This document shows, one piece after another, positions 1,456-63,471 of a DNA stretch of 64,000 nucleotides; the stretch's first letter is position 1, and every line of letters begins with the position of its first letter. A program made the translations under genes and the position numbers. The stretch spans positions 1 to 64,000 of the IMG/VR virus record IMGVR_UViG_3300042922_001182. One strand, 5' to 3'. The notes beneath the pieces are model-generated. The model did no database searches. It worked only from the letters and a program-made list of their open reading frames with translations, and was not told the DNA's origin.

Positions 1456-1465
1456 CACATATCAT
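1456..1465 (+). promoter_or_regulatory. Putative phage early promoter (CACATATCAT)
   Basis: One mismatch to the recurring intergenic motif CACATATTAT. Confidence 0.55.
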
Positions 1466-1557
1466 CATAGCGATCAAGGGTTCTCTGAGTGAACCCGCCC
1501 TATAGTAGTATTAATCACGTCACCCATCATCCCTACTCAGCAACAGGAGGCCCCATC

Positions 1558-1566
1558 ATGAACTAG
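1558..1566 (+). other. Candidate minigene ATG-AAC-TAG (Met-Asn-stop)
   Basis: Perfect AGGAGG at 1545-1550, 7 nt before the ATG; lies between a promoter motif and a hairpin (1594-1620). Confidence 0.4.
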
Positions 1567-1628
1567 CCCGTTCGTCTGTCTAATTGGTCACGAGGGGCGT
1601 CAACACTCCGTTGGCGCCCCGGAAAAAG

Positions 1629-1657
1629 TTGCGCTCCGGCGCGGTTCGTGTTATAAT
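1629..1657 (+). promoter_or_regulatory. Sigma70-like promoter TTGCGC-N17-TATAAT with extended -10 TG
   Basis: TTGCGC 1629-1634, TG 1649-1650, TATAAT 1652-1657, A-tract upstream. Confidence 0.6.
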
Positions 1658-1713
1658 GGGGGGCTCGGGGGACCAACCCCGCCGCCTTATGTTTTTTCTC
1701 AGGGGAGGGAAAT

Positions 1714-2346
1714 TTGAACAGCAAGTACAGTACCGTGTGGCCCCTCGATGGGGCCGTCAAGGGATTCAAGTTGAACAGGGTCTGCTCCTGCCGCCTGGCG
1801 ACCTGCCACCAGTGCGGCCCGCACGCGGTCGACGCCCACCTCCGTGGCTGCTTCAACGGGTTCGACGCCTGCATGGTGCTCCGGGCCGCCCGGGAGCAGG
1901 CCGGGGACCAGCCCTGGTTCCGCGAGTGGGCCAAAGAGCGGTTCTCCTGGGTCGGCGTCCTCATCTCGCACGTCCTCCCGGCGGCGGACATCGGCAAGCT
2001 GCGCTTCCAGAACGACCAGCGCCTCATCGAGGGGGTCATGGAGACCTTCTGCCCCGTCTGCGACGACCCGACGTGGCACAGGCGGATCAACTGCTTCCTC
2101 GACGCGGACAGGGAGATACCAGAGACCCTGCTCCAGTGCTCGACCTGCGGCCACGCCGAGGGGTGGGCCATCCCCCCGGACGCCTACCTGGCCCTGGGGT
2201 CCGGCGTCACCGAGGCCGTGGACGAGCTCGGGTACCGCCACTGCACCGTATGCCACGTCAGGACCGAACACCTCCTGGACGACACCTCGTACACCCGCAA
2301 GGAGACGTGCTGCCGCTGCAAGAGCGTCACCGTCTACCCCCACTAG
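1714..2346 (+). CDS. Multi zinc-ribbon protein
   Basis: TTG start after GGGAGG; CxC/CxxC pairs, including two CxxC...TxH...CxxC units. Confidence 0.8.
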   Translation: MNSKYSTVWPLDGAVKGFKLNRVCSCRLATCHQCGPHAVDAHLRGCFNGFDACMVLRAAREQAGDQPWFREWAKERFSWVGVLISHVLPAADIGKLRFQNDQRLIEGVMETFCPVCDDPTWHRRINCFLDADREIPETLLQCSTCGHAEGWAIPPDAYLALGSGVTEAVDELGYRHCTVCHVRTEHLLDDTSYTRKETCCRCKSVTVYPH

Positions 2347-2362
2347 CCGAGAGGACACGCAA

Positions 2363-3736
2363 TTGAAGCTTGAGCTGATAGACCTGGAGGAGCTGTTCGA
2401 CCCCTCCAGGGTCATCACCAACCCCGAGGGCATCAACAAGAACCAGCAGATGAACCCGGATGGCATCTTCTCCGAGGCCATCTTCGGCAAGCTGGAGCAG
2501 GAGAACAGCTCCTACCAGTGCAACTGCGGCGGCACCGTCGGCAAGTTCAACATCAACCAGACCTGCGCCGAGTGCAAGACCCAGGTACGCCTGTCCGAGC
2601 CCCTGGTCAAGCGCATCGCGTGGATCGACATCGGCGACTACTCGGTGCTCAACCCCAACATATACCGCATCCTGGACCGCATCATGCCCAAGAAGGCGCT
2701 GAGCGTCATCCTGTCCTACGAGGTCAAGCTCACCAAGGAGGGCATCCCCGCCGAGCAGGAGAGCACCCTGACCCCGTTCGACAACATCGGCATCATCGAG
2801 TTCCAGGAGCGCTTCGACGAGATCCTCGCCTGGGCTGCCGACAACAGCAAGGCCAGCCCGAAGGTGATCGAGGAGTGCGTGGAGTTCATCGTGAACAACC
2901 GCGACAAGGCCTTCATCAGCAAGGTCCCCGTGTACAGCAGCGTCCTGCGCCCCGCCCGGATGATGGGCAAGTCGTTCGTCTTCGACGAGGTCAACAACCA
3001 GTACAACGCCCTTCTGCGATCCTCCAACCAGATCAAGGAGGCGGCGTCCGAGGAGCTGACCTACGACTTCGCCCTCCCGCTGCTCTGCAACATGCAGCAG
3101 ATCGCCAACGACATCTTCGAGAAGACCGTCGAGAAGCTCCGGGACAAGGCAGGGTTCATCCGTTCCAGCGTGCTCGGGCGACGCATCAACTTCTCCGCCC
3201 GCTGCGTCATCACGCCGCTCCCTGGCGACCGCCCGGTGGACTCCACCGAGCTGCCGTACCTGGCCTTCCTGGAGCTGTACCGCTTCCAGCTGATCAACCT
3301 GATCTGCCAGGTTAAGCGGGTCAACTCCAAGGCGGCGCTGCGCATCTGGAGCCGGGCCCTCACCAAGTTCGACGCCGAGATCTACGAGCTCATGATGCTC
3401 CTGATCGACCGCACGGAGGGCGGCATCCAGCTGCTCCTGAACCGCAACCCGACGATCAACTTCGGCAGCATCGTGAAGCTCCAGGTGACGCACGTCAAGC
3501 GCGACATCGGGGACTACACGGCGTCCATCCACAACCTCGTCCTGCCCCTCCTGGGCGCGGACTACGACGGCGACACCCTCAACTTCATCCCCCTGCTCGA
3601 CCAGGCCCTCTGCCGCGCCTTCGCGGTGTTCAGCCCCCGCCGCATGCTGGTGGACCGGAACGACGGCTCGTTCAACAAGCAGCTGGGCCTGGACAAGGAC
3701 ATGATCCTGGGCATCCACAGCTTCTGCGCCGAGTAG
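2363..3736 (+). CDS. Phage multisubunit RNA polymerase, beta'-like N-terminal subunit containing the catalytic motif
   Basis: TTG start after GAGGA; DGIFSEAIFG, Zn site CNC...CAEC, GRRINFSARCVI, LLNRNPT, and GADYDGD at ~3554-3574; 457 aa, i.e. a split beta'. Confidence 0.93.
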   Translation: MKLELIDLEELFDPSRVITNPEGINKNQQMNPDGIFSEAIFGKLEQENSSYQCNCGGTVGKFNINQTCAECKTQVRLSEPLVKRIAWIDIGDYSVLNPNIYRILDRIMPKKALSVILSYEVKLTKEGIPAEQESTLTPFDNIGIIEFQERFDEILAWAADNSKASPKVIEECVEFIVNNRDKAFISKVPVYSSVLRPARMMGKSFVFDEVNNQYNALLRSSNQIKEAASEELTYDFALPLLCNMQQIANDIFEKTVEKLRDKAGFIRSSVLGRRINFSARCVITPLPGDRPVDSTELPYLAFLELYRFQLINLICQVKRVNSKAALRIWSRALTKFDAEIYELMMLLIDRTEGGIQLLLNRNPTINFGSIVKLQVTHVKRDIGDYTASIHNLVLPLLGADYDGDTLNFIPLLDQALCRAFAVFSPRRMLVDRNDGSFNKQLGLDKDMILGIHSFCAE

Positions 3737-3740
3737 CGAA

Positions 3741-3782
3741 GTGCGTAGGCCCGCTAGAATCGAATCTAGCGGGCCTACGCAC
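3741..3782. terminator. Perfect 18-bp inverted repeat after the RNAP gene
   Basis: GTGCGTAGGCCCGCTAGA-atcgaa-TCTAGCGGGCCTACGCAC; no U-tract. Confidence 0.6.
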
Positions 3783-3791
3783 ACACATTAT
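3782..3791 (+). promoter_or_regulatory. Putative phage early promoter (CACACATTAT)
   Basis: Motif variant ~35 nt before ATG3827. Confidence 0.55.
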
Positions 3792-3826
3792 CTTTGTGTC
3801 CTGATACGTTATTGGAGGATGATCCC

Positions 3827-4039
3827 ATGAAGCCCAGCACCAACACCGCCGCCCTGGCCGCCGCCCTCCTTGGGGTCGTCATGGCAGCGGACGGCCCCCT
3901 CTACGGCCTCGGCCGATCGCCCGTTGCCAGCTCCCCCTTGGTGGTCTACGGACCCCTCAGGAAGGAGAGGGAGAACCTCAAGAAGCGCGAGTCCCGCAAG
4001 CGCAGCAAGGCCCGCAAGGCCAAGAAAGGCAGCAAGTAA
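3827..4039 (+). CDS. Small protein with hydrophobic N-terminus and very basic tail
   Basis: GGAGG SD before ATG3827; K/R-rich C-terminus. Confidence 0.7.
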   Translation: MKPSTNTAALAAALLGVVMAADGPLYGLGRSPVASSPLVVYGPLRKERENLKKRESRKRSKARKAKKGSK

Positions 4040-4182
4040 TGAACAAGCTCGAAGACGTCGCGGTGGTCGGCCTGGCGGTCGGCTACATGGCCTACAAGAA
4101 GGCCGAGAAGTACCCGGAGATCGCGTTCTGCCTCCTCGTGGTCGGCTACCTGGTGGTAACCGCCTTCGCCGGTCCCTCGTAG
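4039..4182 (+). CDS. 47-aa two-TM membrane protein (not in ORF track)
   Basis: TAATG overlap; MNKLEDVAVVGLAVGYMAYKKAEKYPEIAFCLLVVGYLVVTAFAGPS; typical codon bias. Confidence 0.7.
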   Translation: MNKLEDVAVVGLAVGYMAYKKAEKYPEIAFCLLVVGYLVVTAFAGPS

Positions 4183-4201
4183 GGACCGGCTTTTCTTTTT
4201 T
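4168..4201 (+). terminator. Intrinsic terminator
   Basis: GCCGGTCCCT/AGGGACCGGC stem followed by TTTTCTTTTTT. Confidence 0.8.
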
Positions 4202-4207
4202 GCCGAG

Positions 4208-4219
4208 AACAAGCAGTTA
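4208..4219 (+). promoter_or_regulatory. Putative late promoter AACA-N6-TA
   Basis: AACAagcagtTA, 18 nt before ATG4238. Confidence 0.65.
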
Positions 4220-4237
4220 TGAAGGAAGGAGGGTAGA

Positions 4238-5512
4238 ATGGCAACAGAGAAGGACGTCTACTCCGCCAGGGCGATGACCTCCGTGTCGGCTACCGTCAGC
4301 AGCCTCACGGGGATCCTCGCCAACGACATCCTGGCATCGGTTTTCCCCAAGGGCTTCTTCAAGAAGTTCAAGCCCGGCACCATCAACATCGGCAGCGCCG
4401 GGGCAGAGGACGAGGACGGGGTCCACCACAGCGCCCTGCCCTACCTGGCGATCGACCCCAGGTACGAGGAGCTCCCGGACCCGCTGTTCGACCCCTCGCC
4501 CCAGGCCAACTGGAAGAGCAGCTTCCTGAGCGCCCCGTTCGGCAGGCACTACCAGAAGGTCCTCGACGACCCGATCAACGGCAGGTTCATCTACGCCATC
4601 GGCAAGCGCATGCGGGTCAACTTCGAGGTCACCATCAAGGTGCAGGGCCGCCTGCAGGTCATGAACGTGCTGCACCACCTGATGTCCTCGTTCGAGCCCG
4701 ACGGCATGTTCTACTTCCAGAACGCCCAGCTGGACGCCAACGTCCCGACGCACTTCATGGAGATGCTGATGGACGCGGCGGAGACCGACAGGGAGTCCCC
4801 GGCGTCCGTCGAGGCCTTCCGGAGCTACGTCAGGATGCACAGCAGGCACATGATCGACCGCAAGCGGGACCTGTCGACCGGCAGGGATGTGTACGTCAAC
4901 GGCTTCCGGACCAACGTGCTGTGGAGCATGAACGGCAAGCCCTCCGGCGAGGCCAACCGCAACGGCGGCTCGGAGGACGGGTCCTCGGTGCAGGTGCAGT
5001 TCTCGGCGGAGCTGTGGTACCCCGCCCGCTATCTCCTGGAGATCCTGGCCGACCCGGACTACTGGGTGCCGAGGCACCCCGATTACGTCCCCGGCGTGGA
5101 CGACCCGGCGGACGGGCCCGGCGACTTCACCTTCCAGTTCAACGCCCAGCGCACCACCATCCCCACCGTCAGCGACGGCAAGTCCCTGGTGGAGAAGGTC
5201 GGGTTCGTAACGGAGGCCGAGGGCGACACGGACACGGTGCCGCTGGACGACGGCGTCCTGCCCGAGACCGCGCTGTACGTCATGAGGTACAACGTCGAGA
5301 AGGGATACGACAACTCCCTGTGCTTCGGGCACCTGCTGCTCAAGGACGGCGAGGAGCTGGACCCGGCCCTGGACTACGAGGTCAGCTACGAGGACAGGCT
5401 CCTCACGCTGTCCCAGCCGTTCCGTGGCTACCCCTACATCCTGGCGTTCTACGCGGACATCCCTAAGGTCAAGGAGAGGTACGACCTCGCCGTGGCAGAG
5501 GGCTTCGAGTAA
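4238..5512 (+). CDS. Hypothetical protein, probably late/virion structural
   Basis: 424 aa, strong AGGAGG SD, preceded by the late-type promoter. Confidence 0.75.
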   Translation: MATEKDVYSARAMTSVSATVSSLTGILANDILASVFPKGFFKKFKPGTINIGSAGAEDEDGVHHSALPYLAIDPRYEELPDPLFDPSPQANWKSSFLSAPFGRHYQKVLDDPINGRFIYAIGKRMRVNFEVTIKVQGRLQVMNVLHHLMSSFEPDGMFYFQNAQLDANVPTHFMEMLMDAAETDRESPASVEAFRSYVRMHSRHMIDRKRDLSTGRDVYVNGFRTNVLWSMNGKPSGEANRNGGSEDGSSVQVQFSAELWYPARYLLEILADPDYWVPRHPDYVPGVDDPADGPGDFTFQFNAQRTTIPTVSDGKSLVEKVGFVTEAEGDTDTVPLDDGVLPETALYVMRYNVEKGYDNSLCFGHLLLKDGEELDPALDYEVSYEDRLLTLSQPFRGYPYILAFYADIPKVKERYDLAVAEGFE

Positions 5513-5515
5513 AGA

Positions 5516-5551
5516 GATGAGAGCAACGACCGCTTGGTCGTTGCTCTCATC
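5516..5551. terminator. Hairpin between convergent genes
   Basis: 16-bp perfect stem GATGAGAGCAACGACC-gctt-GGTCGTTGCTCTCATC. Confidence 0.75.
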
Positions 5552-5559
5552 GTCATCTC

Positions 5560-6255: not shown

Positions 6256-6281
6256 AACGTTCTCCTTCTCTTCTGGGATGC

Positions 6282-6293
6282 TATCAAAGTGTT
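6282..6293 (-). promoter_or_regulatory. Putative late promoter AACA-N6-TA
   Basis: Minus strand AACActttgaTA, 26 nt before start 6255. Confidence 0.65.
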
Positions 6294-6335
6294 AGGCGCG
6301 ATCGGGGGTTACCCGATCGCGCTCTGATTTTGTCC

Positions 6336-6578
6336 TTAGCCGTCCTGGGGGACGTCGGCCTGCTGGGCCGCCGCCTGGCGCTCGTCGGCCCTCTCCTTGA
6401 AGTAGAAGGCGATGACGGCACCGGCCAGGGCGAGGATGCCCTCGCTGGTGGGGCGACCGTTGACCTCGTTGATGAACACGGGCGCGACCAGGCCCAGGGC
6501 CAGGAGGCCCCTCACGGAGCCCTTGGGTAGACCGAGGGGCTCCGTGCTGTTGAAGATGCGCTTGAACTTGGCGACCAT
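6336..6578 (-). CDS. Small two-TM holin-like protein
   Basis: 80 aa; PLGLPKGSVRGLLAL motif, two hydrophobic segments, charged tail. Confidence 0.6.
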   Translation of the reverse strand: MVAKFKRIFNSTEPLGLPKGSVRGLLALGLVAPVFINEVNGRPTSEGILALAGAVIAFYFKERADERQAAAQQADVPQDG

Positions 6579-6587
6579 GATTCCCTC

Positions 6588-7271
6588 CTACTTGAAAAGC
6601 TTCTCGGAGATGCTGGGCCAGGCCGCCCAGAGACCGGCCACGCCGGTGGCGACGATGCCAGCGCCCTTGGCGGCGATCTCCAGGGCCTTGCTGGAGCCGA
6701 GGAACGCCTTGACGACCTCGACCTTGCCCGCGCCCTCCTCGGCGTCCTTCTTGTCCTTCTTGCCCTTGGCGGCGGCCTCCTCGGCCTTCCTCTCGGCGAG
6801 GGCCTGGGCCTCCTCGGCCTTGGCAACGCGGTCTTCGAGGAGGTCCTCCTTCCAGTCTTCGAGGACGGCGGTCCTCTCGACGAGGGTGTTGACGATCTCG
6901 GTGAGGGGTTCGAGGCGGGCGATCTTGCCCTCGTGCTCCATGATGTGCTCGAACGCGCTGTTCTGCTTCTCCACGAGCTTCTCGATGGAGGAGGTCAGCC
7001 TGGAGATCTCCTTCAGGGACTGGGCCTGCATGAAGGACAGCTCCTTCACCTCCTGGAGGAGGCCCTTGCCCATGTTGTCGATGCCGCCGCTGTAGAGCTC
7101 TATGAGCTTCGCGACGCTCTTGCTGAGGTCGTGGACGTCCCCGGCGGTCTCGTCCTCGTGCTTCGCCTGCCTCTTCGCCAGCGTCTGAACGACCATCAAG
7201 ATGTCCTTGGTCGAGACGCCGTCATCCGGAGTGGCGCCAGTACGGTCGCCCTTCTTGTTACTTCCAGCCAT
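6588..7271 (-). CDS. Coiled-coil protein with C-terminal TM (holin/antiholin-like)
   Basis: Heptad-rich helical body; C-terminal GAGIVATGVAGLWAAWP. Confidence 0.55.
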   Translation of the reverse strand: MAGSNKKGDRTGATPDDGVSTKDILMVVQTLAKRQAKHEDETAGDVHDLSKSVAKLIELYSGGIDNMGKGLLQEVKELSFMQAQSLKEISRLTSSIEKLVEKQNSAFEHIMEHEGKIARLEPLTEIVNTLVERTAVLEDWKEDLLEDRVAKAEEAQALAERKAEEAAAKGKKDKKDAEEGAGKVEVVKAFLGSSKALEIAAKGAGIVATGVAGLWAAWPSISEKLFK

Positions 7272-7355: not shown

Positions 7356-7367
7356 TATCGTAGTGTT
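7356..7367 (-). promoter_or_regulatory. Putative late promoter AACA-N6-TA
   Basis: Minus strand AACActacgaTA upstream of start 7271. Confidence 0.6.
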
Positions 7368-30596: not shown

Positions 30597-30797
30597 ACCT
30601 CTGGTGAACGTGAACAGAGCTTGTAAGGAAACACCTAAGTATAAACCGAAAACCCCCTCAACAACACCAGAAGTAGACAGGTTTCCGAAACCCTATTCTA
30701 TATATTAGGAACGAACCGTACACCCACTTAGGGTATTCGCGCAGGGGTGCGCGGACAGAACCGACAACGTACTGCTGAAACTGCAAGGAGAAGCGGA

Positions 30798-32285: not shown

Positions 32286-32297
32286 AACACCCTGATG
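32286..32297 (+). promoter_or_regulatory. Putative AACA-N6-TG promoter
   Basis: AACAccctgaTG, 43 nt before the helicase ATG. Confidence 0.55.
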
Positions 32298-34068: not shown

Positions 34069-34080
34069 AACAACCCCATA
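34069..34080 (+). promoter_or_regulatory. Putative late promoter AACA-N6-TA
   Basis: AACAaccccaTA, 30 nt before GTG34111. Confidence 0.6.
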
Positions 34081-38474: not shown

Positions 38475-39335
<861 letters not shown>

Positions 39336-44757: not shown

Positions 44758-44797
44758 TCCCGATGCCCCATCCCCGCCAGGGGATGGGGCGTTCGAC

Positions 44798-44807
44798 CAC
44801 ATATTAT
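44798..44807 (+). promoter_or_regulatory. Putative phage early promoter CACATATTAT
   Basis: Exact motif just after hairpin 44765-44790. Confidence 0.65.
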
Positions 44808-44838
44808 AGGGGTGCACCCATCAGAAAGGAGTGGAACC

Positions 44839-50888: not shown

Positions 50889-50925
50889 CGGGAATCGCCC
50901 TAGGGGCGATTCCCGTCTTCCTTTT
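50889..50925 (+). terminator. Intrinsic terminator
   Basis: CGGGAATCGCCC/GGGCGATTCCCG stem followed by a pyrimidine tract. Confidence 0.75.
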
Positions 50926-50929: not shown

Positions 50930-50939
50930 CGCACATTAT
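50930..50939 (+). promoter_or_regulatory. Putative phage early promoter (CGCACATTAT)
   Basis: Motif variant directly after a terminator and before a gene cluster. Confidence 0.5.
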
Positions 50940-50966
50940 TAGAGTGACCGCAGGAAGGAAAACCAA

Positions 50967-51329
50967 GTGGAGCGAGAATCCCATCTTCCCGAGGGGTCTC
51001 CTGTCACCGAGGAGGAGATCACCCGATACACGACGGCCCAGTGCTGGGTCCTGGCGTGGCACCTGGCGCGGGAGATCCCCGCCCCGTACCAGCCCGCGAT
51101 CGTCGACTTCGACGAGCACGTCCTCGTGCAGATAGGCGGCGAAGACATGTACCTGGATGTGACCGGCATGCATACGAAGGCAGAGCTGAGCGGGTTCTGG
51201 GAGCTGTCGCACAGGATGCACCCGATAGCCTACGACCTCACCCCGCACATCATCCCGGACCAGAGCCACCCGGAGAACGAGCGGGCCAGAGAGGTAGCAA
51301 GAAAATTGATAGCGTACTATCTCAAATAG
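50967..51329 (+). CDS. Hypothetical protein
   Basis: GTG start after AAGGA; CWVLAWHL...HVLV...YLDVTG (C/H/D pattern). Confidence 0.7.
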   Translation: MERESHLPEGSPVTEEEITRYTTAQCWVLAWHLAREIPAPYQPAIVDFDEHVLVQIGGEDMYLDVTGMHTKAELSGFWELSHRMHPIAYDLTPHIIPDQSHPENERAREVARKLIAYYLK

Positions 51330-53265: not shown

Positions 53266-53313
53266 CCCCTGCTTCGTTTCGGCCCTTCCGCCGCCGGGTA
53301 TAAGGCACTCGGG

Positions 53314-53323
53314 CACATATAAT
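53314..53323 (+). promoter_or_regulatory. Putative promoter for gyrB (CACATATAAT) inside an inverted repeat
   Basis: Motif variant flanked by CTCGGGCAC (53308-53316) and GTGCCCGAG (53334-53342). Confidence 0.6.
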
Positions 53324-53460
53324 GAAATAGGACGTGCCCGAGCCCTCACCCGCCGAGCGCGGGAGGACTTCCTATGGCCTAACGGCCAAATCCCCCTGGA
53401 AACAGGGAATCGTATCGCGGCCCCTGAGAGGGCCCAACCCTAGTCACCGAAAGGTTGGTT

Positions 53461-55842
53461 ATGACTGCAACCAAGAAGTACGATAGCTCATCTATCGTCA
53501 CTCTGAAGGGCCTGGAGGCCGTTCGGAAGCGCCCGACGATGTACATCGGCACCCTGGGCGTGGAGGGGTGCTTCCACCTGTTCCGAGAGATCTTCGACAA
53601 CTGCTTGGACGAGTTCATGGGCGGTTGGGGTAAGACCATCTGGGTCTCCATGGACAAGGACGGACGCGGCGTCACCGTCCGGGACGAGGGGCGCGGCATC
53701 CCCGTGGACAACGGGGCGCTTGAGCACCTGCTGACCACGCTCCACTCCGGCGGCAAGTTCGAGGAGGGCGCGTACGCCACCAGCGCCGGTCTGAACGGCG
53801 TCGGCTCGTCCTGCGTGAACGCCCTGTCCGACGTGATGGACGTCACCGTCTTCAAGGACGGCTTCGTTTGGAAGCAGAGCTTCAGCAAGGGCGTCGCCAA
53901 GGGCAAGATCGTCAAGGGCGAGCCCACCAAGAAGAGCGGCACCACGGTCCACTTCGTCCCCGACGTCACCATCATGGAGGAGGTCGCGTTCGACATCGAC
54001 CGGATCCGCCAGTACTGCGACATCCAGGCGTACCTGAACGCCGGGCTGAAGGTGGTGCTGAACGTCGACGGAAAGACGGAGGAGTTCCATCACCCCCAGG
54101 GCCTGATCGAGTACGTCGAACACCTCAATAAGCAGCCCATGTTCAAGACCGTCGCCAGCATGGCGGCGTCGGAGCAGATGCCCTCCGGCAAGCCGGGGCA
54201 GATGATCCACGTCGAGGTGGCCATCGGCTACTCGAAGGGCAGCGAGGAGGAGATGCAGTCCTTCTGTAACTCGATCCCCACCACCGACGGCGGCACCCAC
54301 GTCCAGGGCTTCCGCATGTCCCAGGTCACGATCATCAAGAACCTCGTGAAGGAGTTGAAGATCCTGGGCAAGAAGGATGAGGACATCGAGATCAAGGGCG
54401 AGGACGTCCGCGAGGGCCTGGTCGCCATCGTCTCCGTCAAGCACCCGGACCCCAAGTACAAGGGCCAGACCAAGCACAACCTGGGCAACCAGGACGTGCA
54501 GGGCATCGTCCAGCGCCTCCTGAACGCCGAGTTCAAGATCTGGCTCGACGCTCACCCGGAAGAGGCCAAGATCATCGCCAAGAAGTGCGTGGCCGCAGCC
54601 AAGGCCCGCGTGGCCGCCAACCGCGCCCGCACCGCCGTCCAGCGCAAGGAGTCGCTGGGCTTCGCCGCCGTCAACAACGTCGGCAAGCTCGCCGACTGCA
54701 CCAGCACCAACGCCGAGGAGTGCGAGCTCTTCATGGTCGAGGGCGACAGCGCGGGCGGCTCGGCGAAGAGCGGTCGCGACCCCCGGGTCCAGGCCATCTA
54801 CGCCCTGCGTGGCAAGCCCCTCAACTCCAACGACGTGCAGGTGCAGCGCCTGCTCGACAACAAGGAGCTGTCCGACCTGCTGACCGTCATGGGCTGCGGC
54901 TACGGCGAGCACTTCGACGTCGAGAAGCGCAAGTACCACAAGATCGTCATCATGACCGACGCGGACGTGGACGGCGCCCACATCGCCATCCTCCTGCTGA
55001 CGTTCCTGTTCCGCCACTGCCGCCCGCTGTTCGAGGTCGGCGCGATCTACGCCGCCCAGCCCCCGCTCTACAAGGTGGAGACCAAGGGCGGTAAGGACGT
55101 GTACATGCTGAACGACCACCAGTACGAGACCTACATCCGCAAGCGGGCGGCAGAGCTCTTCGACGTCAGCCTGAGCAAGGACGGCGAGACCTACGAGGAC
55201 TACCTGGCGGCCAACGCCTTCTCCTCGTTCCTCTCCAAGGCCCAGAACTACCCGGAGACCATCCGGGCCACCGCAGAGCGCATCGGCTGCAACGCGCAGC
55301 TGGTGGAGTTCTTCGCGGACTACGGCGGCTACATCGGGGACACGGAGAACACCGAGACCTTCGCGGAGGCCCTCACCGACGCGTTCCCCGGCCTCACCAC
55401 TACCGTCACCCAGCCGGGCCAGTTCTACCTGGAGGGCCTCTACCAGAACCGCTTCCACGCGTTCTACGTGGACGCCGATCTCCTCCCCCTCGTCGAACCC
55501 GTCGTCAAGGCCCGCGAGGGCTTCGGCGGCTACACCATGGCCTACGTCCTGCCCAAGGGCTCGGAGGAGGGCGAGTACCTGTCCATCTCCCAGGCCGTCG
55601 CCAAGGTCATCAGCGCGGCCACCCCGGCGCACCGCCAGCGGTTCAAGGGCCTGGGCGAGATGCCCGCGCCCGAGCTGTGGGACACCACCATGAACCCCGC
55701 CACCCGCTCGATGCTCCGCATCACGGTCGCGGACATGGAGGGCACCGACGACCTCATCCAGCGCCTCATGGGCAACGACCCGGAGCACCGCAAGGCGTTC
55801 CTGGAGACCAACCAGAACCTAGTTAAGAACCTGGACGTCTAG
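53461..55842 (+). CDS. gyrB: DNA gyrase subunit B
   Basis: GLEAVRKRPTMYIG, DEGRGIP, GGTH, EGDSAGG, MTDADVDG, RFKGLGEM, C-terminal NLDV; long Toprim insertion. Confidence 0.95.
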   Translation: MTATKKYDSSSIVTLKGLEAVRKRPTMYIGTLGVEGCFHLFREIFDNCLDEFMGGWGKTIWVSMDKDGRGVTVRDEGRGIPVDNGALEHLLTTLHSGGKFEEGAYATSAGLNGVGSSCVNALSDVMDVTVFKDGFVWKQSFSKGVAKGKIVKGEPTKKSGTTVHFVPDVTIMEEVAFDIDRIRQYCDIQAYLNAGLKVVLNVDGKTEEFHHPQGLIEYVEHLNKQPMFKTVASMAASEQMPSGKPGQMIHVEVAIGYSKGSEEEMQSFCNSIPTTDGGTHVQGFRMSQVTIIKNLVKELKILGKKDEDIEIKGEDVREGLVAIVSVKHPDPKYKGQTKHNLGNQDVQGIVQRLLNAEFKIWLDAHPEEAKIIAKKCVAAAKARVAANRARTAVQRKESLGFAAVNNVGKLADCTSTNAEECELFMVEGDSAGGSAKSGRDPRVQAIYALRGKPLNSNDVQVQRLLDNKELSDLLTVMGCGYGEHFDVEKRKYHKIVIMTDADVDGAHIAILLLTFLFRHCRPLFEVGAIYAAQPPLYKVETKGGKDVYMLNDHQYETYIRKRAAELFDVSLSKDGETYEDYLAANAFSSFLSKAQNYPETIRATAERIGCNAQLVEFFADYGGYIGDTENTETFAEALTDAFPGLTTTVTQPGQFYLEGLYQNRFHAFYVDADLLPLVEPVVKAREGFGGYTMAYVLPKGSEEGEYLSISQAVAKVISAATPAHRQRFKGLGEMPAPELWDTTMNPATRSMLRITVADMEGTDDLIQRLMGNDPEHRKAFLETNQNLVKNLDV

Positions 55843-57520: not shown

Positions 57521-57542
57521 AAGAAAGAAGGAGATACCAACC

Positions 57543-58109: not shown

Positions 58110-58111
58110 AG

Positions 58112-58121
58112 CACATATTAT
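58112..58121 (+). promoter_or_regulatory. Putative phage early promoter CACATATTAT
   Basis: Exact motif followed by a 5' hairpin GACCCTTCGCCC/GGGTGAAGGGTC. Confidence 0.65.
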
Positions 58122-58189
58122 AGCAAAGACCCTTCGCCCATAATCGGGTGAAGGGTCGCCTTCAGTCCTCTTAGAAAGGAATAAGAATC

Positions 58190-59245
58190 ATGAGCGAGAA
58201 GAAGCTCCCCATGGGCGCGGCCAGCCAGGTCAACGGCCTCGTCGGGACCCGGAACGGGCTGCTGGTCGTCCGGGAGGCCAGGGGGAACGGGGCGTACGAG
58301 TGTCTGTGCCTCGGATGTAACAAGGGATCCGTCGTCGGGGCGGGTTACATCAAGCACAACTCCTGCTGCTACAACTGCGGGCTGAAGATCCCCAAGCGCA
58401 AGTCAAAGATGTACACCGTTCTCAGCAAGCGCCACCTACAGATGACCAAGAGCTGCACGGACAAGAGCAGCAGGTCCTACCCGAGTCTCGGCGGCCGTGG
58501 GATCAGCGTCGACCCCTCCATTCGCAACGTCAACGCCTACATGGCCTTGATAGTCAACCTACCCGGCTACGCCGAGATGAAGAGCGCGAAGGATGTCTCC
58601 GTCTATGATGTCTCTCGGATAGACAGAGATGTGGACTTCGCCCCGGGGAACCTCAGGATCATCCACGAGAGCCTGAAGGGTAAAGCTGCAACCCCCGAAT
58701 CGATCACGCAGGCCGAAGCCCCCAAACTGGCCGTCGTCGATGGGTTCGGCATCTTCCTGAAGCTGACCCCCGGTGGGGGGATCAAGCCCCTGGAGATGGA
58801 GCTGGCGGTCGGCCCGTTCCGGAAGAGCGGGAAAGTCTACTACGACGAGGAGCACCGGTGCGTCCTGGAGGAGCACTACGCCCCCACCAGGGCGGAGATC
58901 CGGAAGAAGGCGAAGGAGATGGCGGAGAAGCACCTGGATGACCTCGGTCGTGCGGCGAAGCTCACCAGGGACTCGCTCACCCTCTTCCTCAACGACGCCA
59001 CGCCCAGGACCGGCGCCCCCGAGGGGTGGATGGTCGCCGTCAACGAGGAGTCCGGCCATGTGGTCGAGGCCCCCAACAAGGACGCCCTGGCGAGGTTGCT
59101 GGAGGTATCGCGCTCCACCGTCTACCGCTCGCTCAACGAGAAGCGGAAGCTGCTCAACGGCTACCAGGTGAGGACCGCCGAGGACTACAACCAGTCCGTA
59201 AACGACGGGATGGGCTACAAGGTGACGGGGCTCGACCCGGAGTGA
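58190..59245 (+). CDS. Degenerate HNH-like protein with C-terminal NUMOD1/HTH-like domain
   Basis: ECLC..C, GGRGISV, VSRIDRDVDFAPGNLR; C-terminal ALARLLEVSRSTVYRSL. Confidence 0.7.
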   Translation: MSEKKLPMGAASQVNGLVGTRNGLLVVREARGNGAYECLCLGCNKGSVVGAGYIKHNSCCYNCGLKIPKRKSKMYTVLSKRHLQMTKSCTDKSSRSYPSLGGRGISVDPSIRNVNAYMALIVNLPGYAEMKSAKDVSVYDVSRIDRDVDFAPGNLRIIHESLKGKAATPESITQAEAPKLAVVDGFGIFLKLTPGGGIKPLEMELAVGPFRKSGKVYYDEEHRCVLEEHYAPTRAEIRKKAKEMAEKHLDDLGRAAKLTRDSLTLFLNDATPRTGAPEGWMVAVNEESGHVVEAPNKDALARLLEVSRSTVYRSLNEKRKLLNGYQVRTAEDYNQSVNDGMGYKVTGLDPE

Positions 59246-59305
59246 ACCCCTAAACCCCCGGGGAACACCGAATGGTCAGAGCCCCCGATAGAAAGGTAGG
59301 CAGTA

Positions 59306-59620
59306 GTGGCCACGAACGTTCCAATCGGATTCTCCAAAGAGGCAATCGGCGTCTACATCAGCGACGGTTCGAGCATCAACGACTTCAAGGTGAGCACCGT
59401 CCCCGGTACCTGGACGCACCAGGGAGGGGACATGTGGGCCCACCCCACCCACGCCGGTTGGCTCCTGGGAGCCTCCATCGTGGGCACGCCCGAGGAGGCC
59501 ACCCTCCTAGTCCAGGGCACCGCCGTCAAGCGCATCAAGATCCTGGAAGAGGCGCTGCAGAAAGCCAGGGGAATCCTCCGCAACACCTACGCCCCCGAGG
59601 AGGTCCACCGTGGCGGTTAG
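59306..59620 (+). CDS. Hypothetical protein
   Basis: GTG start after AAAGGT; codon bias. Confidence 0.65.
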   Translation: MATNVPIGFSKEAIGVYISDGSSINDFKVSTVPGTWTHQGGDMWAHPTHAGWLLGASIVGTPEEATLLVQGTAVKRIKILEEALQKARGILRNTYAPEEVHRGG

Positions 59621-59804
59621 CATCGACAACGGCCCCGAGGTCACGGTGAACCTCACCCAGGCCGAGCTGCAGGAGATCATCGGCTCCCTCATGATCAGGC
59701 AGCGGCACGCCAACAGCTCCACCGACTCCGCAGTCATCAAGCGCAACTGCGAGAGCGCCCTGACAAAGCTCCGCCCCCTTCGGAAGGGCGGGTTCTACGA
59801 TTAG
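59610..59804 (+). CDS. Hypothetical protein
   Basis: GGAGG SD; 64 aa. Confidence 0.65.
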   Translation: MAVSIDNGPEVTVNLTQAELQEIIGSLMIRQRHANSSTDSAVIKRNCESALTKLRPLRKGGFYD

Positions 59805-59815
59805 AAAGGACCACG

Positions 59816-62296
59816 ATGACCAAGATCATCGATAAGGACATCACCTCCGTCTTCACCGAGAACTTCGTGGACTACTCCATGAGCGTCCTCCTGAAGCGTG
59901 CCATCCCGTCCGCTCTGGACGGGCTCAAGCCGGTCCACCGGCGCATCCTGTACGCGATGCGCCAGAACGGGCTCTTCCCCAGCAAGAAGTACAAGAAGTC
60001 CGCCCACACGGTCGGCTTCGTGCTCGGCTCGTTCCACCCCCACGGCGACTCGTCCGTCTACGACGCCATGGTGCGCATGGCTCAGCCCTGGGCCGTCAAC
60101 GCCATGCTGGTGGACGGCTACGGCAACTTCGGCTCCCAGGACGGGGACGGGGCCGCCGCTTACCGCTACACCGAGGCCCGTCTGCAGAAGTTCACCACGG
60201 ACTTCCTCCTGGACGAGATCCACAAGGACGCCGTCCCCATGCTCCCGACGTACGACGGGAGCGACATGGAGCCGTTCGTTCTCCCGGCCAAGCTCCCCCT
60301 GCTGCTCATCAACGGCACCTCGGGCATCGGCTCGGCTCACTCCACCGACATCCCCCCCTGCAACCCCAGCGACGTGATCCAGGCCACTCTGGCCCTGCTC
60401 CAGGACCCCACCATCGGGGACCGGGACATCGCCCGCCGCATCCGCATCGACTACCCCACCGGGGGCATCGTCTGCTCCTCCGTGGCGGTCGAGAACGCCT
60501 TCACCACCGGCCGAGGCAGCGTCCGGGTCCGGGCCAAGGTCCACCACGAGGAGGACAAGAAGAACGGCCGCGAGCTGATCGTCGTGGACGAGCTGGCGTA
60601 CGGCACCAACACCGAGAACGTGCTGAACTCCATCGTCCAGAAGGTCAAGGAGGGCACGATCGAGGGCATCTCCAACATCCGCAACGAGTCCGCCAAGGGC
60701 AAGATCCGCGTGGTGGTGGAGGTCAAGCCCGGCCACCAGGCCGGTGTGGTCGAGAACCTGCTCTACAAGATGACCCAGCTGCAGATCACGCAGAAGATCA
60801 TCATGATCGCGACGAGCAACAACGACTTCCGCCAGTACAACGCCAAGGGGCTGCTCACCGACTGGATCGAGTTCCGCCGTACCACCTTGAAGCGCATCTT
60901 CTCGTTCGACGTCCAGAAGCACCTCGTCCGCATGCACATCCTGGAGGGCTTGCTGAAGGCCCTCGCCGACATCGACAAGGTGGTCGCCATCATCCGGGCA
61001 TCCAAGGGCCGCCATGAGGCCATCGAGCGCCTCGTCGCGTTCAAGCACGACAAGAGCGACCCCGGCTACAGCCCCGAGCAGGCCGCAGCCATCTTGGACA
61101 TGCGCCTCTCCAAGCTCACAGGCCTGGAGAAGAACCAGCTCGCCGAGGAGCACGTCCAGCTCACGGCGACCGTGGAGCGTCTCAAGGACCTGCTGCGGGA
61201 CTCCGACGAGCTGGACGCCTTCATCCGCTCTCAGCTGGAGGAGATCGCCTCGAAGGTCAAGGACATTTTCGGTCGCAAGGACCCCTGGACCAGCATCGAG
61301 GAGATCGAGACCAACATCGAGGCCGAGGACGTGGTGCCGGACGAGGACTACCTCGTCGCCATCACCAACGGCGGCTTCATCAAGAAGCTGAAGCACGAGA
61401 TCAACGCGCAGAAGCGCGGGGGCAAGGGCACCTCTGTCGGCAAGACTCGCGAGGACGACTTCGTCTCCCGCATGTTCATCGCCAACAGCAAGGACCACCT
61501 GCTCATCTTCACCAACACCGGCCGCGTGTTCGACGTCAAGGTCTGGCGCGTCGCGGAGAGCAGCATGGGCTCGGTGGGCAAGCCCGCCGCCGCCTACGTC
61601 AGCCTCCGGGAGAACGAGCGGGTCCAGGCCGTGCTCAACCTCAGCAACACCCAGTTCGAGGACGACGGATCGTACCTCATGTTCGCCACCCAGAACGGCC
61701 AGGTGAAGAAGACGCTGCTCTCCGAGTTCCGCAACATCCTCACCACCGGCATCATCGCCATCACCCTCAAGGAGGGCGACGAGCTCCTGGGCGTCAAGTT
61801 CATCGACGGCGCCAAGGCCCAGCAGAACGTCTTCATGGCGACGGCTGGCGGAACCGGCATCCGCTTCGACCACTCGGACGTGCGCCCCATGGGCCGCGAC
61901 ACCACGGGTGTGATGGGCATCAAGCTCCGAGAGGACAGCGGCGACTACGTGGTCTCGTTCGACATCGTGGAGGACGAGGACTCCTACGTCCTGACCGCCA
62001 CCCAGGACGGCCGCTCCAAGCGCACGCCCATCACGGAGTACCCCGTGCAGGAGCGCGGCGGCTTCGGCCGCATCGCCACCCAGCTCCAGGAGAACGACCT
62101 CCTGATCAAGGCGCTCATCGTCAAGGAGGAGGACATCATGTTCATTAGCTCCGAGAAGATGGCCCGCGTCCCCGCAGAAGAGATCAAGATCTACCTGCGT
62201 CCCACCTACGGCATCAAGGCGGTCAGCCTGGACGAGGGCGCGTACCTCGTCGACGTGGTCCGCATCGACGCCGATGAGACCTCGGAAGAGGTCTAG
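59816..62296 (+). CDS. gyrA: DNA gyrase subunit A
   Basis: DGLKPVHRRILY, HPHGDSSVY, AYRYTEAR (catalytic Tyr), GyrA-box QKRGGKG, six C-terminal pinwheel blades. Confidence 0.95.
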   Translation: MTKIIDKDITSVFTENFVDYSMSVLLKRAIPSALDGLKPVHRRILYAMRQNGLFPSKKYKKSAHTVGFVLGSFHPHGDSSVYDAMVRMAQPWAVNAMLVDGYGNFGSQDGDGAAAYRYTEARLQKFTTDFLLDEIHKDAVPMLPTYDGSDMEPFVLPAKLPLLLINGTSGIGSAHSTDIPPCNPSDVIQATLALLQDPTIGDRDIARRIRIDYPTGGIVCSSVAVENAFTTGRGSVRVRAKVHHEEDKKNGRELIVVDELAYGTNTENVLNSIVQKVKEGTIEGISNIRNESAKGKIRVVVEVKPGHQAGVVENLLYKMTQLQITQKIIMIATSNNDFRQYNAKGLLTDWIEFRRTTLKRIFSFDVQKHLVRMHILEGLLKALADIDKVVAIIRASKGRHEAIERLVAFKHDKSDPGYSPEQAAAILDMRLSKLTGLEKNQLAEEHVQLTATVERLKDLLRDSDELDAFIRSQLEEIASKVKDIFGRKDPWTSIEEIETNIEAEDVVPDEDYLVAITNGGFIKKLKHEINAQKRGGKGTSVGKTREDDFVSRMFIANSKDHLLIFTNTGRVFDVKVWRVAESSMGSVGKPAAAYVSLRENERVQAVLNLSNTQFEDDGSYLMFATQNGQVKKTLLSEFRNILTTGIIAITLKEGDELLGVKFIDGAKAQQNVFMATAGGTGIRFDHSDVRPMGRDTTGVMGIKLREDSGDYVVSFDIVEDEDSYVLTATQDGRSKRTPITEYPVQERGGFGRIATQLQENDLLIKALIVKEEDIMFISSEKMARVPAEEIKIYLRPTYGIKAVSLDEGAYLVDVVRIDADETSEEV

Positions 62297-62381
62297 CGAG
62301 ACAACTGAACAGACGCCGGGAGACCGGCTGTACGGAGCCGGGGGTGCGAGCCCCCGGCCTACCAAGAAAGGAACAACGACA

Positions 62382-63020
62382 ATGCCGTCTGAGCACAGGA
62401 GGCTCTCTGCCAGGGAGATCGGAGAGGGGATCGAGGTCCAGCGTTTGCGGGTCTACGGCCTCTACAACCACCAGGGCGCGATCCCTCCTGAAACGTCGAA
62501 GAAGATCCACGAGGACCTGAAGGGGCTCTTCCCGACCACCAAGGTCAAGAGCTTCTCCACCCTCGGTTCCGCTGACAAGATGAAGTACCTGGAGTGGCTG
62601 AAGGAACAGCCCTCGTCCGGGGAAGAAGACAAGGGAAAGGAAGCGCAAGAGATGACCCAGAACAAGGGGCAGGAGTCCGGAGAGGTCACGGTGGTCCCCA
62701 ACGACCGCTCCAAGGTGATCGTCATCCTGGGCACGGAGCTGGCCGAGCGACGGGAAGAGGTGAACTCCCTCCGTCTCATGCTCAAGGAGCGTGACTCGGA
62801 GATCGGCTACATGTCGACCCAGATCGTCCAGAAGCTCAAGGAGGACAACGAGTACAAGGACCTCCTCATCGAGGAGCAGAAGGCCGAGATCGAGGCCCTC
62901 AAGGAGAAGCTGAAGGAGTTCGAGCAGGTTCCCTCCCCCAAGTTGGACAAGGAGGAGAAGGAAGTGCTTGAAAAATTGCAGTTCAGGGTTGAAGGGGGTG
63001 GTACCGCATCGGCCGCTTGA
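62382..63020 (+). CDS. Coiled-coil protein; paralog of 63543..>64000
   Basis: AAAGGA SD before ATG62382; RLRVYG and YxxWLxxQP motifs. Confidence 0.75.
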   Translation: MPSEHRRLSAREIGEGIEVQRLRVYGLYNHQGAIPPETSKKIHEDLKGLFPTTKVKSFSTLGSADKMKYLEWLKEQPSSGEEDKGKEAQEMTQNKGQESGEVTVVPNDRSKVIVILGTELAERREEVNSLRLMLKERDSEIGYMSTQIVQKLKEDNEYKDLLIEEQKAEIEALKEKLKEFEQVPSPKLDKEEKEVLEKLQFRVEGGGTASAA

Positions 63021-63453
63021 CCCGGCGGCACTATCACTGTCCACGACCTGCGGAATCAGCGACGGAGCCCGCAAGACGAACCGCAAGATCGAGACCTTCT
63101 CCGTCTCGAAGAAGGCCCTGACGGCTATGGACGATGCCGAGAAGCGGCTTGCGGCCGTGTTCGGCCAGGACGCCGCCGATGAGATGATGGACGAGATCCT
63201 GCGTTGCATGAAGGACACCAACATGAAGGACCACAACGCGGTCAGGAAGGCGTTCCGCCTCTGCGCGGACGTGTTCATCAACCCCCGTGTCGGCGTGGCG
63301 CTCCGACGGGAGTCCTCCCTGTACCACACCCTGGGCGGTACCCACTACTACAAGAAGGACCCGATCCGGATCGTCTACCGTGCCAACGGCCCGGTGGTGA
63401 CCCTGGTCAAGGTGGGCATGCGGAACGACGTCTACGAAGACGTGGCTATGTAG
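62968..63453 (+). CDS. RelE/ParE-like toxin-fold protein (start uncertain)
   Basis: FSVSKKA near the N-terminus; C-terminal RIVYR...VTLVKVGMRNDVY. Confidence 0.6.
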   Translation: MKNCSSGLKGVVPHRPLDPAALSLSTTCGISDGARKTNRKIETFSVSKKALTAMDDAEKRLAAVFGQDAADEMMDEILRCMKDTNMKDHNAVRKAFRLCADVFINPRVGVALRRESSLYHTLGGTHYYKKDPIRIVYRANGPVVTLVKVGMRNDVYEDVAM

Positions 63454-63461
63454 TAATCAGC

Positions 63462-63471
63462 TACATATTAT
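63462..63471 (+). promoter_or_regulatory. Putative phage early promoter (TACATATTAT)
   Basis: Motif variant followed by a 5' hairpin. Confidence 0.6.

What the first reader, a model, noticed from the sequence alone, without database searches (positions are those of the whole stretch)
1456..63471. Second phage promoter class, CACATATTAT, before early gene clusters
Seen: AT-rich decamer YRCAYATHAT at 1456, 3782, 44798, 50930, 53314, 58112 and 63462, all + strand and intergenic. It usually follows a terminator or stop codon and often precedes a 5' hairpin. Known: early promoters of phiKZ/AR9-type virion RNAPs have a TATATTA-like core. Inference: these are virion-RNAP promoters, so both temporal programmes are readable in this window and gyrB is an early gene.
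Basis: partly seen in the sequence, partly recalled or inferred. Interest (0 to 1): 0.6.

Follow-up and report, generated by a model that had tools for sequence, protein, structure and literature searches.

The report
AR9-type virion-RNAP early promoters
The AT-rich decamer is real and is most likely the early promoter read by the RNA polymerase that this GC-rich soil jumbo phage carries in its virion, because it matches the mapped early promoter of Bacillus phage AR9 in sequence, spacing and genome position.

Summary
Observation confirmed. An eighth pattern match (51244) lies inside an ORF and is probably chance.

The window is the first 64 kb of a complete 238,984-bp soil-metagenome jumbo phage (63.5% GC). 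Genome-wide there are about 25 strong sites. All are on the + strand; one weaker site with a perfect core is on the - strand.

Aligning 21 sites gives tTCRa-CACAYATTAT-N6-G. The G was not used to choose the sites, yet it is present in 21 of 21.

The dRNA-seq-mapped early (virion RNAP) promoter of AR9 is AAATATATATTAT-N6-G(+1). The core and spacing are therefore the same.

The phage encodes AR9-like virion and non-virion split RNAP subunit sets. 69 of my 276 gene calls match AR9 in synteny. Six or more sites sit where AR9 has an early promoter, including before gyrB. Six metagenomic relatives, from 28% to 65% GC, keep ATAT[TCA]AT-N6-G within 500 nt upstream of the same nvRNAP gene.

No -35 hexamer is present, so a host sigma-70 promoter is unlikely.

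The AR9 late motif AACA-N6-TA/G is also present, so both programmes are readable in the window.

Verdict: interpretation supported, but only computationally. This is a new member of a known kind.

The parts
1456..1472 (+). Early promoter: core CACATATCAT, N6, then predicted start G at 1472. It lies 13 nt after a stop codon and 388 nt before the nvRNAP beta'-N gene.
   Evidence: (30.2 bits)
3762..3798 (+). Early promoter: core CACACATTAT at 3782-3791, predicted start G at 3798. GAATCTA (3762-3768) lies 20 nt before the core, inside the 3' part of terminator hairpin 3745-3778. The likely ATG of the small downstream gene is at 3827.
   Evidence: (23.7 bits)
44798..44814 (+). Early promoter: consensus core CACATATTAT, predicted start G at 44814. 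It directly follows hairpin 44765-44790 and heads a cluster of small genes of unknown function.
   Evidence: (31.3 bits)
50930..50946 (+). Early promoter: core CGCACATTAT, predicted start G at 50946. It follows terminator 50889-50915 plus a T run, after the VWA-domain gene.
   Evidence: (29.5 bits)
53314..53330 (+). Early promoter: core CACATATAAT, predicted start G at 53330, about 125 nt before gyrB. AR9 has an early promoter in the same position before its gyrB homologue gp024.
   Evidence: (23.7 bits)
58112..58157 (+). Early promoter: consensus core, predicted start G at 58128, 3 nt after a stop codon. The transcript would begin with a 12-bp hairpin (58128-58157). It heads an HNH-like gene and, further on, gyrA.
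   Evidence: (24.1 bits)
63462..63508 (+). Early promoter: core TACATATTAT, predicted start G at 63478, 9 nt after a stop codon. A 14-bp hairpin (63477-63508) sits at the 5' end of the transcript.
   Evidence: (25.4 bits)
51244..51253 (+). It lies inside an ORF, has C instead of G after N6, and scores under 8 bits.
1844..3736 (+). nvRNAP beta'-N subunit gene (homologue of AR9 gp269). This gene has to be transcribed before the phage's second polymerase can exist.
53455..55842 (+). gyrB-like topoisomerase II subunit (homologue of AR9 gp024). Predicted to be early.
59816..62296 (+). gyrA-like topoisomerase II subunit (homologue of AR9 gp044, which is an early gene in AR9).
6282..6293 (-). Late-type promoter AACA-N6-TA, 38 nt before a - strand gene. 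This is the other promoter class.
7356..7367 (-). Late-type promoter AACA-N6-TA before the - strand gene 6588-7271.
1602..1613 (+). Late-type AACA-N6-TG in tandem with the early site at 1456, before the nvRNAP beta'-N gene. AR9 uses this early-plus-late arrangement for its 'continuously expressed' genes.

Best explanation
These sites are early promoters of an AR9-like jumbo phage. They are read by the multisubunit RNA polymerase that is packaged in the virion and injected with the DNA.

The recognised element is a single block, tTCRa-CACAYATTAT, lying at about -16 to -7. Transcription should start at the invariant G six bases downstream. A sub-class adds a GAATCTA or GAAACTA element at about -36 to -30.

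Transcription from these sites would express the + strand clusters straight after injection. These clusters hold small genes of unknown function, gyrB and gyrA, and above all the subunits of the second, non-virion polymerase. That second polymerase then reads the AACA-N6-TA/G late promoters in front of the structural genes and the virion-RNAP genes.

What is shown: the motif, its statistics, its orientation and position, the presence of both polymerase gene sets, and conservation of the motif in AR9 and in metagenomic relatives.

What is inferred: the start site, the timing, and which polymerase reads the sites.
For: - Motif and invariant G: 21 of 21 sites. 25 sites score 18.9 bits or more, all on the + strand and co-oriented with the genes downstream.
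- The AR9 early consensus AAATATATATTAT-N6-G(+1) was mapped by dRNA-seq and primer extension, and is independent of protein synthesis (PMC5312081). I read AR9's 34 annotated early promoters from the record and they show the same ATATTAT-N6-G.
- tblastn to AR9 finds homologues of nvRNAP subunits gp269, gp088, gp104, gp153 and gp225, and of vRNAP subunits gp077, gp144, gp188 and gp263. 69 of 276 proteins match in synteny. Pfam gives weak Rpb1 and Rpb2 hits.
- Sites share their position with AR9 early promoters: before gyrB, before nv beta-C, after the DNA ligase gene, before the gp199-like and gp213-like genes, before nv beta'-N, and the genome's only - strand site, next to the gp263 homologue.
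- All five nvRNAP genes have a site or a close variant upstream (1456, 73564, 83649, 144531, 188523). Three of the four vRNAP genes, the capsid gene and the sheath gene have the late motif instead.
- Six relatives at 39-48% protein identity keep ATAT[TCA]AT-N6-G on the coding strand within 500 nt upstream of their nv beta-C gene, directly before it in four of them. Their GC content ranges from 28% to 65%.
- No conserved -35 hexamer is present, and the sigma-70 scan flags none of the sites.
Against: - There is no transcript data. The only public run holding this DNA is the source soil metagenome.
- TATTAT followed 7 nt later by a start base is also the geometry of a bacterial -10 element, so host RNAP is not formally excluded.
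- For three of the five nvRNAP genes, only off-consensus variants are found upstream.
- A separate GGGTATAAT-type element sits beside several sites, and its reader is unknown.
- Some relatives of this phage group (RSL2, RSF1) are reported to be rifampicin-sensitive (PMC5312081).
Confidence: 0.85

Rival explanations
1. These are host sigma-70-type early promoters. TATTAT would act as a -10 hexamer with the start 7 nt downstream, read by the host RNA polymerase before any phage polymerase is made.
For: The -10-like hexamer and the distance to the G fit the bacterial geometry. The AR9 authors could not fully exclude some host transcription, and RSL2 and RSF1 are rifampicin-sensitive.
Against: - No -35 hexamer is conserved 16-18 nt upstream.
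- No TGn extended -10 is present; the bases there are an invariant CACA.
- The sigma-70 scan flags none of the sites.
- The extended block matches the AR9 vRNAP promoter, not a sigma-70 promoter.
- The same core is kept in relatives that must infect very different hosts, from 28% to 65% GC.
Confidence: 0.07
2. These are promoters for the non-virion polymerase, with an alternative specificity factor. That would make them a middle class rather than an early class.
For: phiKZ has a middle class that its purified nvRNAP does not read in vitro (PMC7598289). The phage has a gp226-like specificity subunit.
Against:
- AR9 has only two classes, and this motif matches its early class.
Confidence: 0.05
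3. The motif is not a promoter. It could be a binding site for a regulator or an RNA processing signal that happens to lie between genes.
For: Its position after stop codons and terminators would also suit an RNA-level signal.
Against: - The motif is asymmetric and strictly strand-specific.
- It has a fixed distance to an invariant G.
- It is homologous to a mapped promoter.
- It also occurs in divergent intergenic regions, where no upstream transcript would carry it (sites 87900, 93798, 156845, 174815, 196775, 201324).
Confidence: 0.03

Closest known systems
Early (virion RNAP) promoters of Bacillus phage AR9/PBS1: AAATATATATTAT-N6-G(+1)
   Same: - The core ATATTAT, the 6-nt spacer and the G start are identical.
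- It is a single-block element without a -35.
- The positions match: before gyrB, before nvRNAP genes and at other syntenic places.
- Some genes carry the early motif in tandem with AACA-N6-TA/G late promoters.

   Different: - The upstream half reads CACA instead of TATA, so two T positions have become C. AR9's A-rich -19..-17 becomes tTCRa.
- The genome is 63.5% GC against about 28% in AR9-like phages, so each promoter is an AT island.
- A sub-class carries an extra GAATCTA element 20 nt upstream of the core.
- Proteins are only 25-50% identical to AR9's.
Early promoters of phiKZ and 201phi2-1 (Chimalliviridae)
   Same: They are highly conserved AT-rich elements about 10 bp upstream of the start site of early genes, attributed to the injected multisubunit vRNAP (PMC7598289; PMC11512511).
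   Different: - The phiKZ-type motifs are longer, with conserved -10, -20 and -30 regions.
- The RNAP subunits of those phages are much more distant: about 24-26% identity, against 31-39% for the AR9 group.
Bacterial sigma-70 -10 element (TATAAT at -12 to -7)
   Same: The hexamer TATTAT and its distance to the start base fit.
   Different: There is no -35 and no TGn. An invariant CACA prefix is present.
Early promoters of coliphage N4 virion RNAP
   Same: Both follow the logic of an injected polymerase transcribing early genes (PMC5312081).
   Different: N4 uses a giant single-subunit polymerase. From my own knowledge, not tested here, its promoters are DNA hairpins. No hairpin is part of the conserved element here.

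Membership tests
AR9/phiKZ-type vRNAP early promoter | A highly conserved AT-rich element of about 10-13 nt centred near -10 | tested here: met
   CACAYATTAT has 1.3-2.3 bits per position in 21 aligned sites. It shares ATATTAT with the AR9 consensus.
AR9/phiKZ-type vRNAP early promoter | A conserved start base (G) 6 nt downstream of the element | tested here: met
   G is present in 21 of 21 sites at N6+1 and in all seven window sites. Whether it is the real 5' end cannot be tested without RNA.
AR9/phiKZ-type vRNAP early promoter | The genome encodes a split beta/beta' virion RNAP as well as a non-virion RNAP | tested here: met
   tblastn to AR9 finds vRNAP homologues at 70068-70799, 131741-133252, 152496-156647 and 236664-237896. 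It finds nvRNAP homologues at 1844-3736, 73572-75590, 83807-85225, 144915-146873 and 189132-190922. E-values run from 1e-45 to 1e-150. Virion packaging itself is not testable.
AR9/phiKZ-type vRNAP early promoter | Lies upstream of, and co-oriented with, early operons including nvRNAP subunit genes, and is absent before late genes | tested here: met
   Strong sites lie before nv beta'-N and nv beta-C. Variant sites lie before the other three nvRNAP genes. No site lies before the - strand structural genes or vRNAP genes, which carry AACA-N6-TA instead.
AR9/phiKZ-type vRNAP early promoter | Conserved in related phages at orthologous places | tested here: met
   Six positions are shared with AR9. 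ATAT[TCA]AT-N6-G lies within 500 nt upstream of nv beta-C in loci L016-L021.
AR9/phiKZ-type vRNAP early promoter | Transcription is immediate, rifampicin-resistant and independent of new protein synthesis | not testable with these tools
   The phage is uncultured. The only public run holding the DNA is the source soil metagenome, and there is no RNA.
Bacterial sigma-70 promoter | A -35 hexamer 16-18 nt upstream of the -10 hexamer, or a TGn extended -10 | tested here: not met
   Information content at -19..-14 is 0.5 bit or less. The sigma-70 scan flags none of the sites. The bases before TATTAT are ACA, not TGn.
AR9-type nvRNAP late promoter (AACA-N6-TA/G) | AACA at -11 to -8, with TA or TG at -1/+1 | tested here: not met
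   The CACATATTAT sites do not contain it. It forms a separate class with 37 co-oriented intergenic sites.

The most novel reading that the evidence does not exclude
This may be a high-GC lineage of the deoxyuridine-DNA jumbo phages (the AR9, PBS1, phiR1-37 group).

Both promoter grammars of AR9 are kept. That includes the late AACA-N6-TA motif, whose recognition by AR9 nvRNAP strictly needs template-strand dU.

The complete genome has no ThyA, ThyX, dUTPase or dCMP deaminase, and it keeps a homologue of AR9's 5'(3')-deoxyribonucleotidase.

If this is right, the T-to-C changes in the upstream half of the early promoter (CACA for TATA), together with the extra GAATCTA element at about -33, would show which positions the virion polymerase really reads.
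Probability: 0.3. Interest if true: 0.65.

Novelty: new member of a known kind. Interest (0 to 1): 0.35.

Why it matters

The useful result here is the contrast. A phage with 63.5% GC, from soil, whose proteins are only 25-50% identical to AR9's, keeps ATATTAT-N6-G for its early genes and AACA-N6-TA/G for its late genes.

- This points to ATATTAT-N6-G as the likely invariant core of vRNAP recognition. No promoter-specificity factor has yet been identified for that enzyme.
- It gives a ready-made natural set of variants for biochemical tests: CACA against TATA, C or A at one core position, and the optional upstream GAATCTA.
- It allows a full early/late transcription map of an uncultured phage from sequence alone.
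- It raises the testable question of whether high-GC members of this clade also use dU-DNA.

Tried and rejected
- Megablast of 8 kb of the window against GenBank phages found no match.
- The search for related loci with the beta'-N protein in viral contigs found no relative.
- The sequencing-run search found only the source soil metagenome and no RNA.
- The genome search by handle for the relatives' records failed because they are not held.
- Rfam on the window gave no hits, and there are no tRNAs.
- The k-mer CTACGAG looked like a second intergenic motif. It turned out to be coding sequence of genes that my first gene caller had missed, and I then improved the gene calls.
- The pattern [GT]ATAAGG is not a class.
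- I tested whether 5' hairpins start exactly at the predicted +1, which would have been independent support for the start site. Only one does, at 58112. The others start between -10 and +12, so this gives no support.
- My first GC3-only gene caller confused antisense frames in the structural block. I replaced it with a codon-likelihood caller.
- Pfam alone barely detects the split RNAP subunits, so the subunit assignments rest on tblastn to AR9.
Full report
WHAT THE WINDOW IS

The window is bases 1-64000 of a single 238,984-bp contig with 63.5% GC. The contig is held as a virus record rated 100% complete, with a 127-nt direct terminal repeat, so it assembles as a circle. The only public sequencing run that holds it is a soil metagenome, probably its source, and no RNA run holds it.

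There is no near-identical phage in GenBank. The protein at 1844-3736 is a beta'-like RNAP fragment. Its best matches are in Bacillus phages Goe21, AR9 and PBS1 and in Yersinia phage phiR1-37, at 34-39% identity. phiKZ-like phages are far weaker, at about 24-26%.

CHECKING THE OBSERVATION

The pattern YRCAYATHAT matches at the seven stated places and at 51244, all on the + strand. Shuffles expect 0.48 matches.

I made my own gene calls with a codon-likelihood model: 276 genes covering 94% of the genome. By these calls the seven sites are intergenic and 51244 is inside an ORF.

Because the degenerate pattern was fitted to the sites, I looked for evidence that does not depend on it.
- Genome-wide, the pattern occurs 24 times on the + strand and once on the - strand. 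The exact decamer CACATATTAT occurs 10 times and once respectively. My estimate from base composition expects about 0.03 per strand.
- Aligning 21 intergenic sites shows weakly conserved flanking bases, tTCRa, before the core.
- The same alignment shows a G exactly 7 nt after the last T in 21 of 21 sites. That column played no part in choosing the sites.
- A matrix built from the sites finds 25 hits at 18.9 bits or more, all on the + strand and co-oriented with the next gene. A tail of variants includes the one - strand site, at 236265.
- 51244 and a similar in-ORF match at 187984 lack the G and score under 8 bits. They are chance matches.

- Three window sites abut strong terminator-like hairpins (3745-3778, 44765-44790, 50889-50915). 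The other four lie 3 to 49 nt after a stop codon.
- Strong hairpins at the 5' end of the predicted transcript occur at two of the seven window sites (58128-58157, 63477-63508). About seven of the 25 genome sites have a hairpin at or near the predicted start.

WHAT IT IS

The AR9 transcriptome paper (PMC5312081) mapped 41 early start sites by dRNA-seq and primer extension. It gives the consensus AAATATATATTAT-(6N)-G(+1). [quoted passage not shown]

I read the 34 early promoters annotated in the AR9 record. They show that consensus directly. The one at 227688 is annotated on the + strand but fits only on the - strand, in front of the nvRNAP beta'-N gene.

Aligned at the G, the consensus here (CACAYATTAT-N6-G) is identical to AR9's in ATATTAT-N6-G. 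It differs by two T-to-C changes further upstream.

The review PMC7598289 states that every RNAP-encoding jumbo phage has such an AT-rich motif of about 10 nt centred near -10 before its presumed early operons.

THE GENETIC LOGIC FITS

tblastn of my 276 proteins against AR9 gives 69 hits in long syntenic runs.

It finds homologues of all five nvRNAP subunits:
- 1844-3736 (gp269)
- 73572-75590 (gp088)
- 83807-85225 (gp104)
- 144915-146873 (gp153)
- 189132-190922 (gp225)

It finds homologues of four vRNAP subunits:
- 70068-70799 (gp077)
- 131741-133252 (gp144)
- 152496-156647 (gp188)
- 236664-237896 (gp263)

Strong early sites precede nv beta'-N (1456) and nv beta-C (73564). Off-consensus variants precede the other three nvRNAP genes (83649, 144531, 188523).

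The late genes carry a different motif, AACA-N6-T(A/G). This group includes three of the four vRNAP genes, the capsid, sheath and terminase genes, and the - strand block in the window. The motif is exactly AR9's nvRNAP late consensus.
- It occurs 49 times in the 8% of the genome that is non-coding, against 122 times in the coding 92%.
- 37 of the non-coding sites are co-oriented with a start codon 20-140 nt downstream. The distances cluster at 36-59 nt.
- The nv beta'-N gene has the early site (1456) and a late-type site (1602) in tandem. This is the arrangement AR9 uses for its 'continuously expressed' genes, which include four of its nvRNAP subunits.

POSITIONS ARE CONSERVED TOO

AR9 has early promoters at the following places, and each has a counterpart here.

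| AR9 early promoter | Position in AR9 | Site here |
|---|---|---|
| Before gyrB homologue gp024 | 17247 | 53314 |
| Before the gp086-088 operon, which includes nv beta-C | 72060 | 73564 |
| Just after the DNA ligase gene | 79912 | 78793 |
| Before gp199 | 164214 | 156845 |
| Before gp213 | 181705 | 174815 |
| Before nv beta'-N | 227688 | 1456 |
| On the opposite strand, next to gp263 | 220698 | 236265, the only - strand site |

RELATIVES

The nearest proteins to nv beta-C are 39-48% identical and lie on metagenomic contigs of 85-275 kb. I fetched six loci.

Each has ATAT[TCA]AT-N6-G on the coding strand within 500 nt upstream of its nv beta-C gene. In four loci it lies directly before the gene; in L019 and L021 it heads the operon that contains it. 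Each locus has several more such sites in intergenic positions, whatever its base composition.
- ggATAT[ACT]AT in the two loci at 62-65% GC.
- TATATATTAT in the loci at 28-47% GC.

ATATNAT-N6-G is therefore the core for the whole clade. The CAC prefix is specific to this phage.

RIVALS

A host sigma-70 promoter is the main rival, because TATTAT followed 7 nt later by the start base is the bacterial -10 geometry. Against it:
- No -35 hexamer is conserved.
- There is no TGn.
- The sigma-70 scan flags none of the sites.
- The block upstream of the hexamer matches AR9's vRNAP promoter.
- The same core persists in relatives that must infect very different hosts.

A middle class read by nvRNAP is unlikely, because the sites precede the nvRNAP genes themselves.

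A non-promoter signal is unlikely given the strict strandedness, the fixed G, and the sites in divergent intergenic regions.

My estimates are about 0.85 for vRNAP early promoters, 0.07 for host RNAP, 0.05 for a middle class and 0.03 for anything else.

EXTRA ANATOMY FOUND ON THE WAY

(a) Seven sites carry GAATCTA or GAAACTA exactly 20 nt before the core, which is -36 to -30 from the predicted start. Five of the nine GAATCTA heptamers in the whole genome are in that position. These sites mostly have off-consensus cores, and five of the seven lie in divergent intergenic regions. The element may act as a compensating upstream element. The window example is 3762.

(b) Six + strand sites of the form GGGTATAAT(G), with TTTNNN or TTGCGC 16-17 nt upstream, lie before four nvRNAP genes, gyrB and a gp199-like gene. 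They are often next to an early site. In the window they are at 1652 and 53299. Their reader is unknown. They could be host-type promoters or a third class.

(c) At 78793, 210019 and 221941 the promoter core sits between a stop codon and a terminator-like hairpin, and the predicted start falls inside the hairpin's 5' arm.

(d) The complete genome has no ThyA, ThyX, dUTPase or dCMP deaminase. It keeps a homologue of AR9's deoxyribonucleotidase. The late AACA motif is conserved, and AR9 nvRNAP recognises it only with template-strand dU (PMC7598289). Together these make a dU-DNA genome possible but unproven.

VERDICT

It has not been tested experimentally.

This is a new member of a known kind. 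Its interest is modest, and lies mainly in the conservation of both promoter grammars across a very large shift in base composition.

Noticed in passing
window 6282-6293(-), 7356-7367(-), 1602-1613, 4208-4219, 30630-30641, 32286-32297, 34069-34080, 39323-39334 (+); 37 co-oriented sites genome-wide: A second promoter class, AACA-N6-T(A/G), is identical to the AR9 nvRNAP late consensus. It is about 4.5-fold enriched in non-coding DNA. Sites cluster 36-59 nt before start codons of structural genes, vRNAP genes and some replication genes.
   Followed up: partly
window 3762-3768; genome 87880, 127782, 140604, 181744, 196755, 236285(-): GAATCTA or GAAACTA lies exactly 20 nt before the early core, about -36 to -30 from the predicted start, in a sub-class of sites that mostly have off-consensus cores. 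Five of the nine GAATCTA heptamers in the genome are in this position.
   Followed up: partly
window 1652-1657 and 53299-53304; genome 73537, 83733, 156893, 188444: GGGTATAAT(G)-type elements have TTTNNN or TTGCGC 16-17 nt upstream. They lie before four nvRNAP subunit genes, gyrB and a gp199-like gene, often beside an early site. They could be host-type promoters or a third class. The strict sigma-70 scan does not flag them.
   Followed up: partly
genome 78793, 210019, 221941 (loci L001, L008, L009): The early core sits between a stop codon and a terminator-like hairpin with a T run, and the predicted start falls inside the hairpin's 5' arm. Read-through transcripts from upstream would meet the full stem. 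Transcripts started at the promoter would carry only a shortened stem.
   Followed up: partly
whole genome G000: No ThyA, ThyX, dUTPase or dCMP deaminase was found in a genome rated complete. A homologue of AR9 gp150, a 5'(3')-deoxyribonucleotidase, lies at 137991-138770(-) beside the DNA polymerase genes. This is compatible with dU-DNA as in AR9, PBS1 and phiR1-37, but no Ugi homologue was found.
   Followed up: partly
genome 238813-238829, 45 nt before window base 1 on the circular map: The contig has a 127-nt terminal repeat. An early promoter just before the window start would drive the first window genes, 16-1443.
   Followed up: yes
window 1444-1843: A 400-nt gap with no convincing ORF lies before the nvRNAP beta'-N gene. 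It stacks three promoter-like elements: early at 1456, late-type at 1602 and TATAAT-type at 1652. The beta'-N protein has about 174 extra N-terminal residues compared with AR9 gp269.
   Followed up: no
window 58190-59245: The first gene after the early promoter at 58112, lying between gyrB and gyrA, has weak HNH-endonuclease PHROG hits and a weak CENP-B-type HTH hit. It may be a homing endonuclease or a DNA-binding protein.
   Followed up: no
window 30690-30710: A TATATATTAG-like sequence lies on the + strand in the divergent region before the SbcD-like operon, where AR9 has an early promoter (AR9 position 47). It lacks the final T and the G and was not scored as a site.
   Followed up: no
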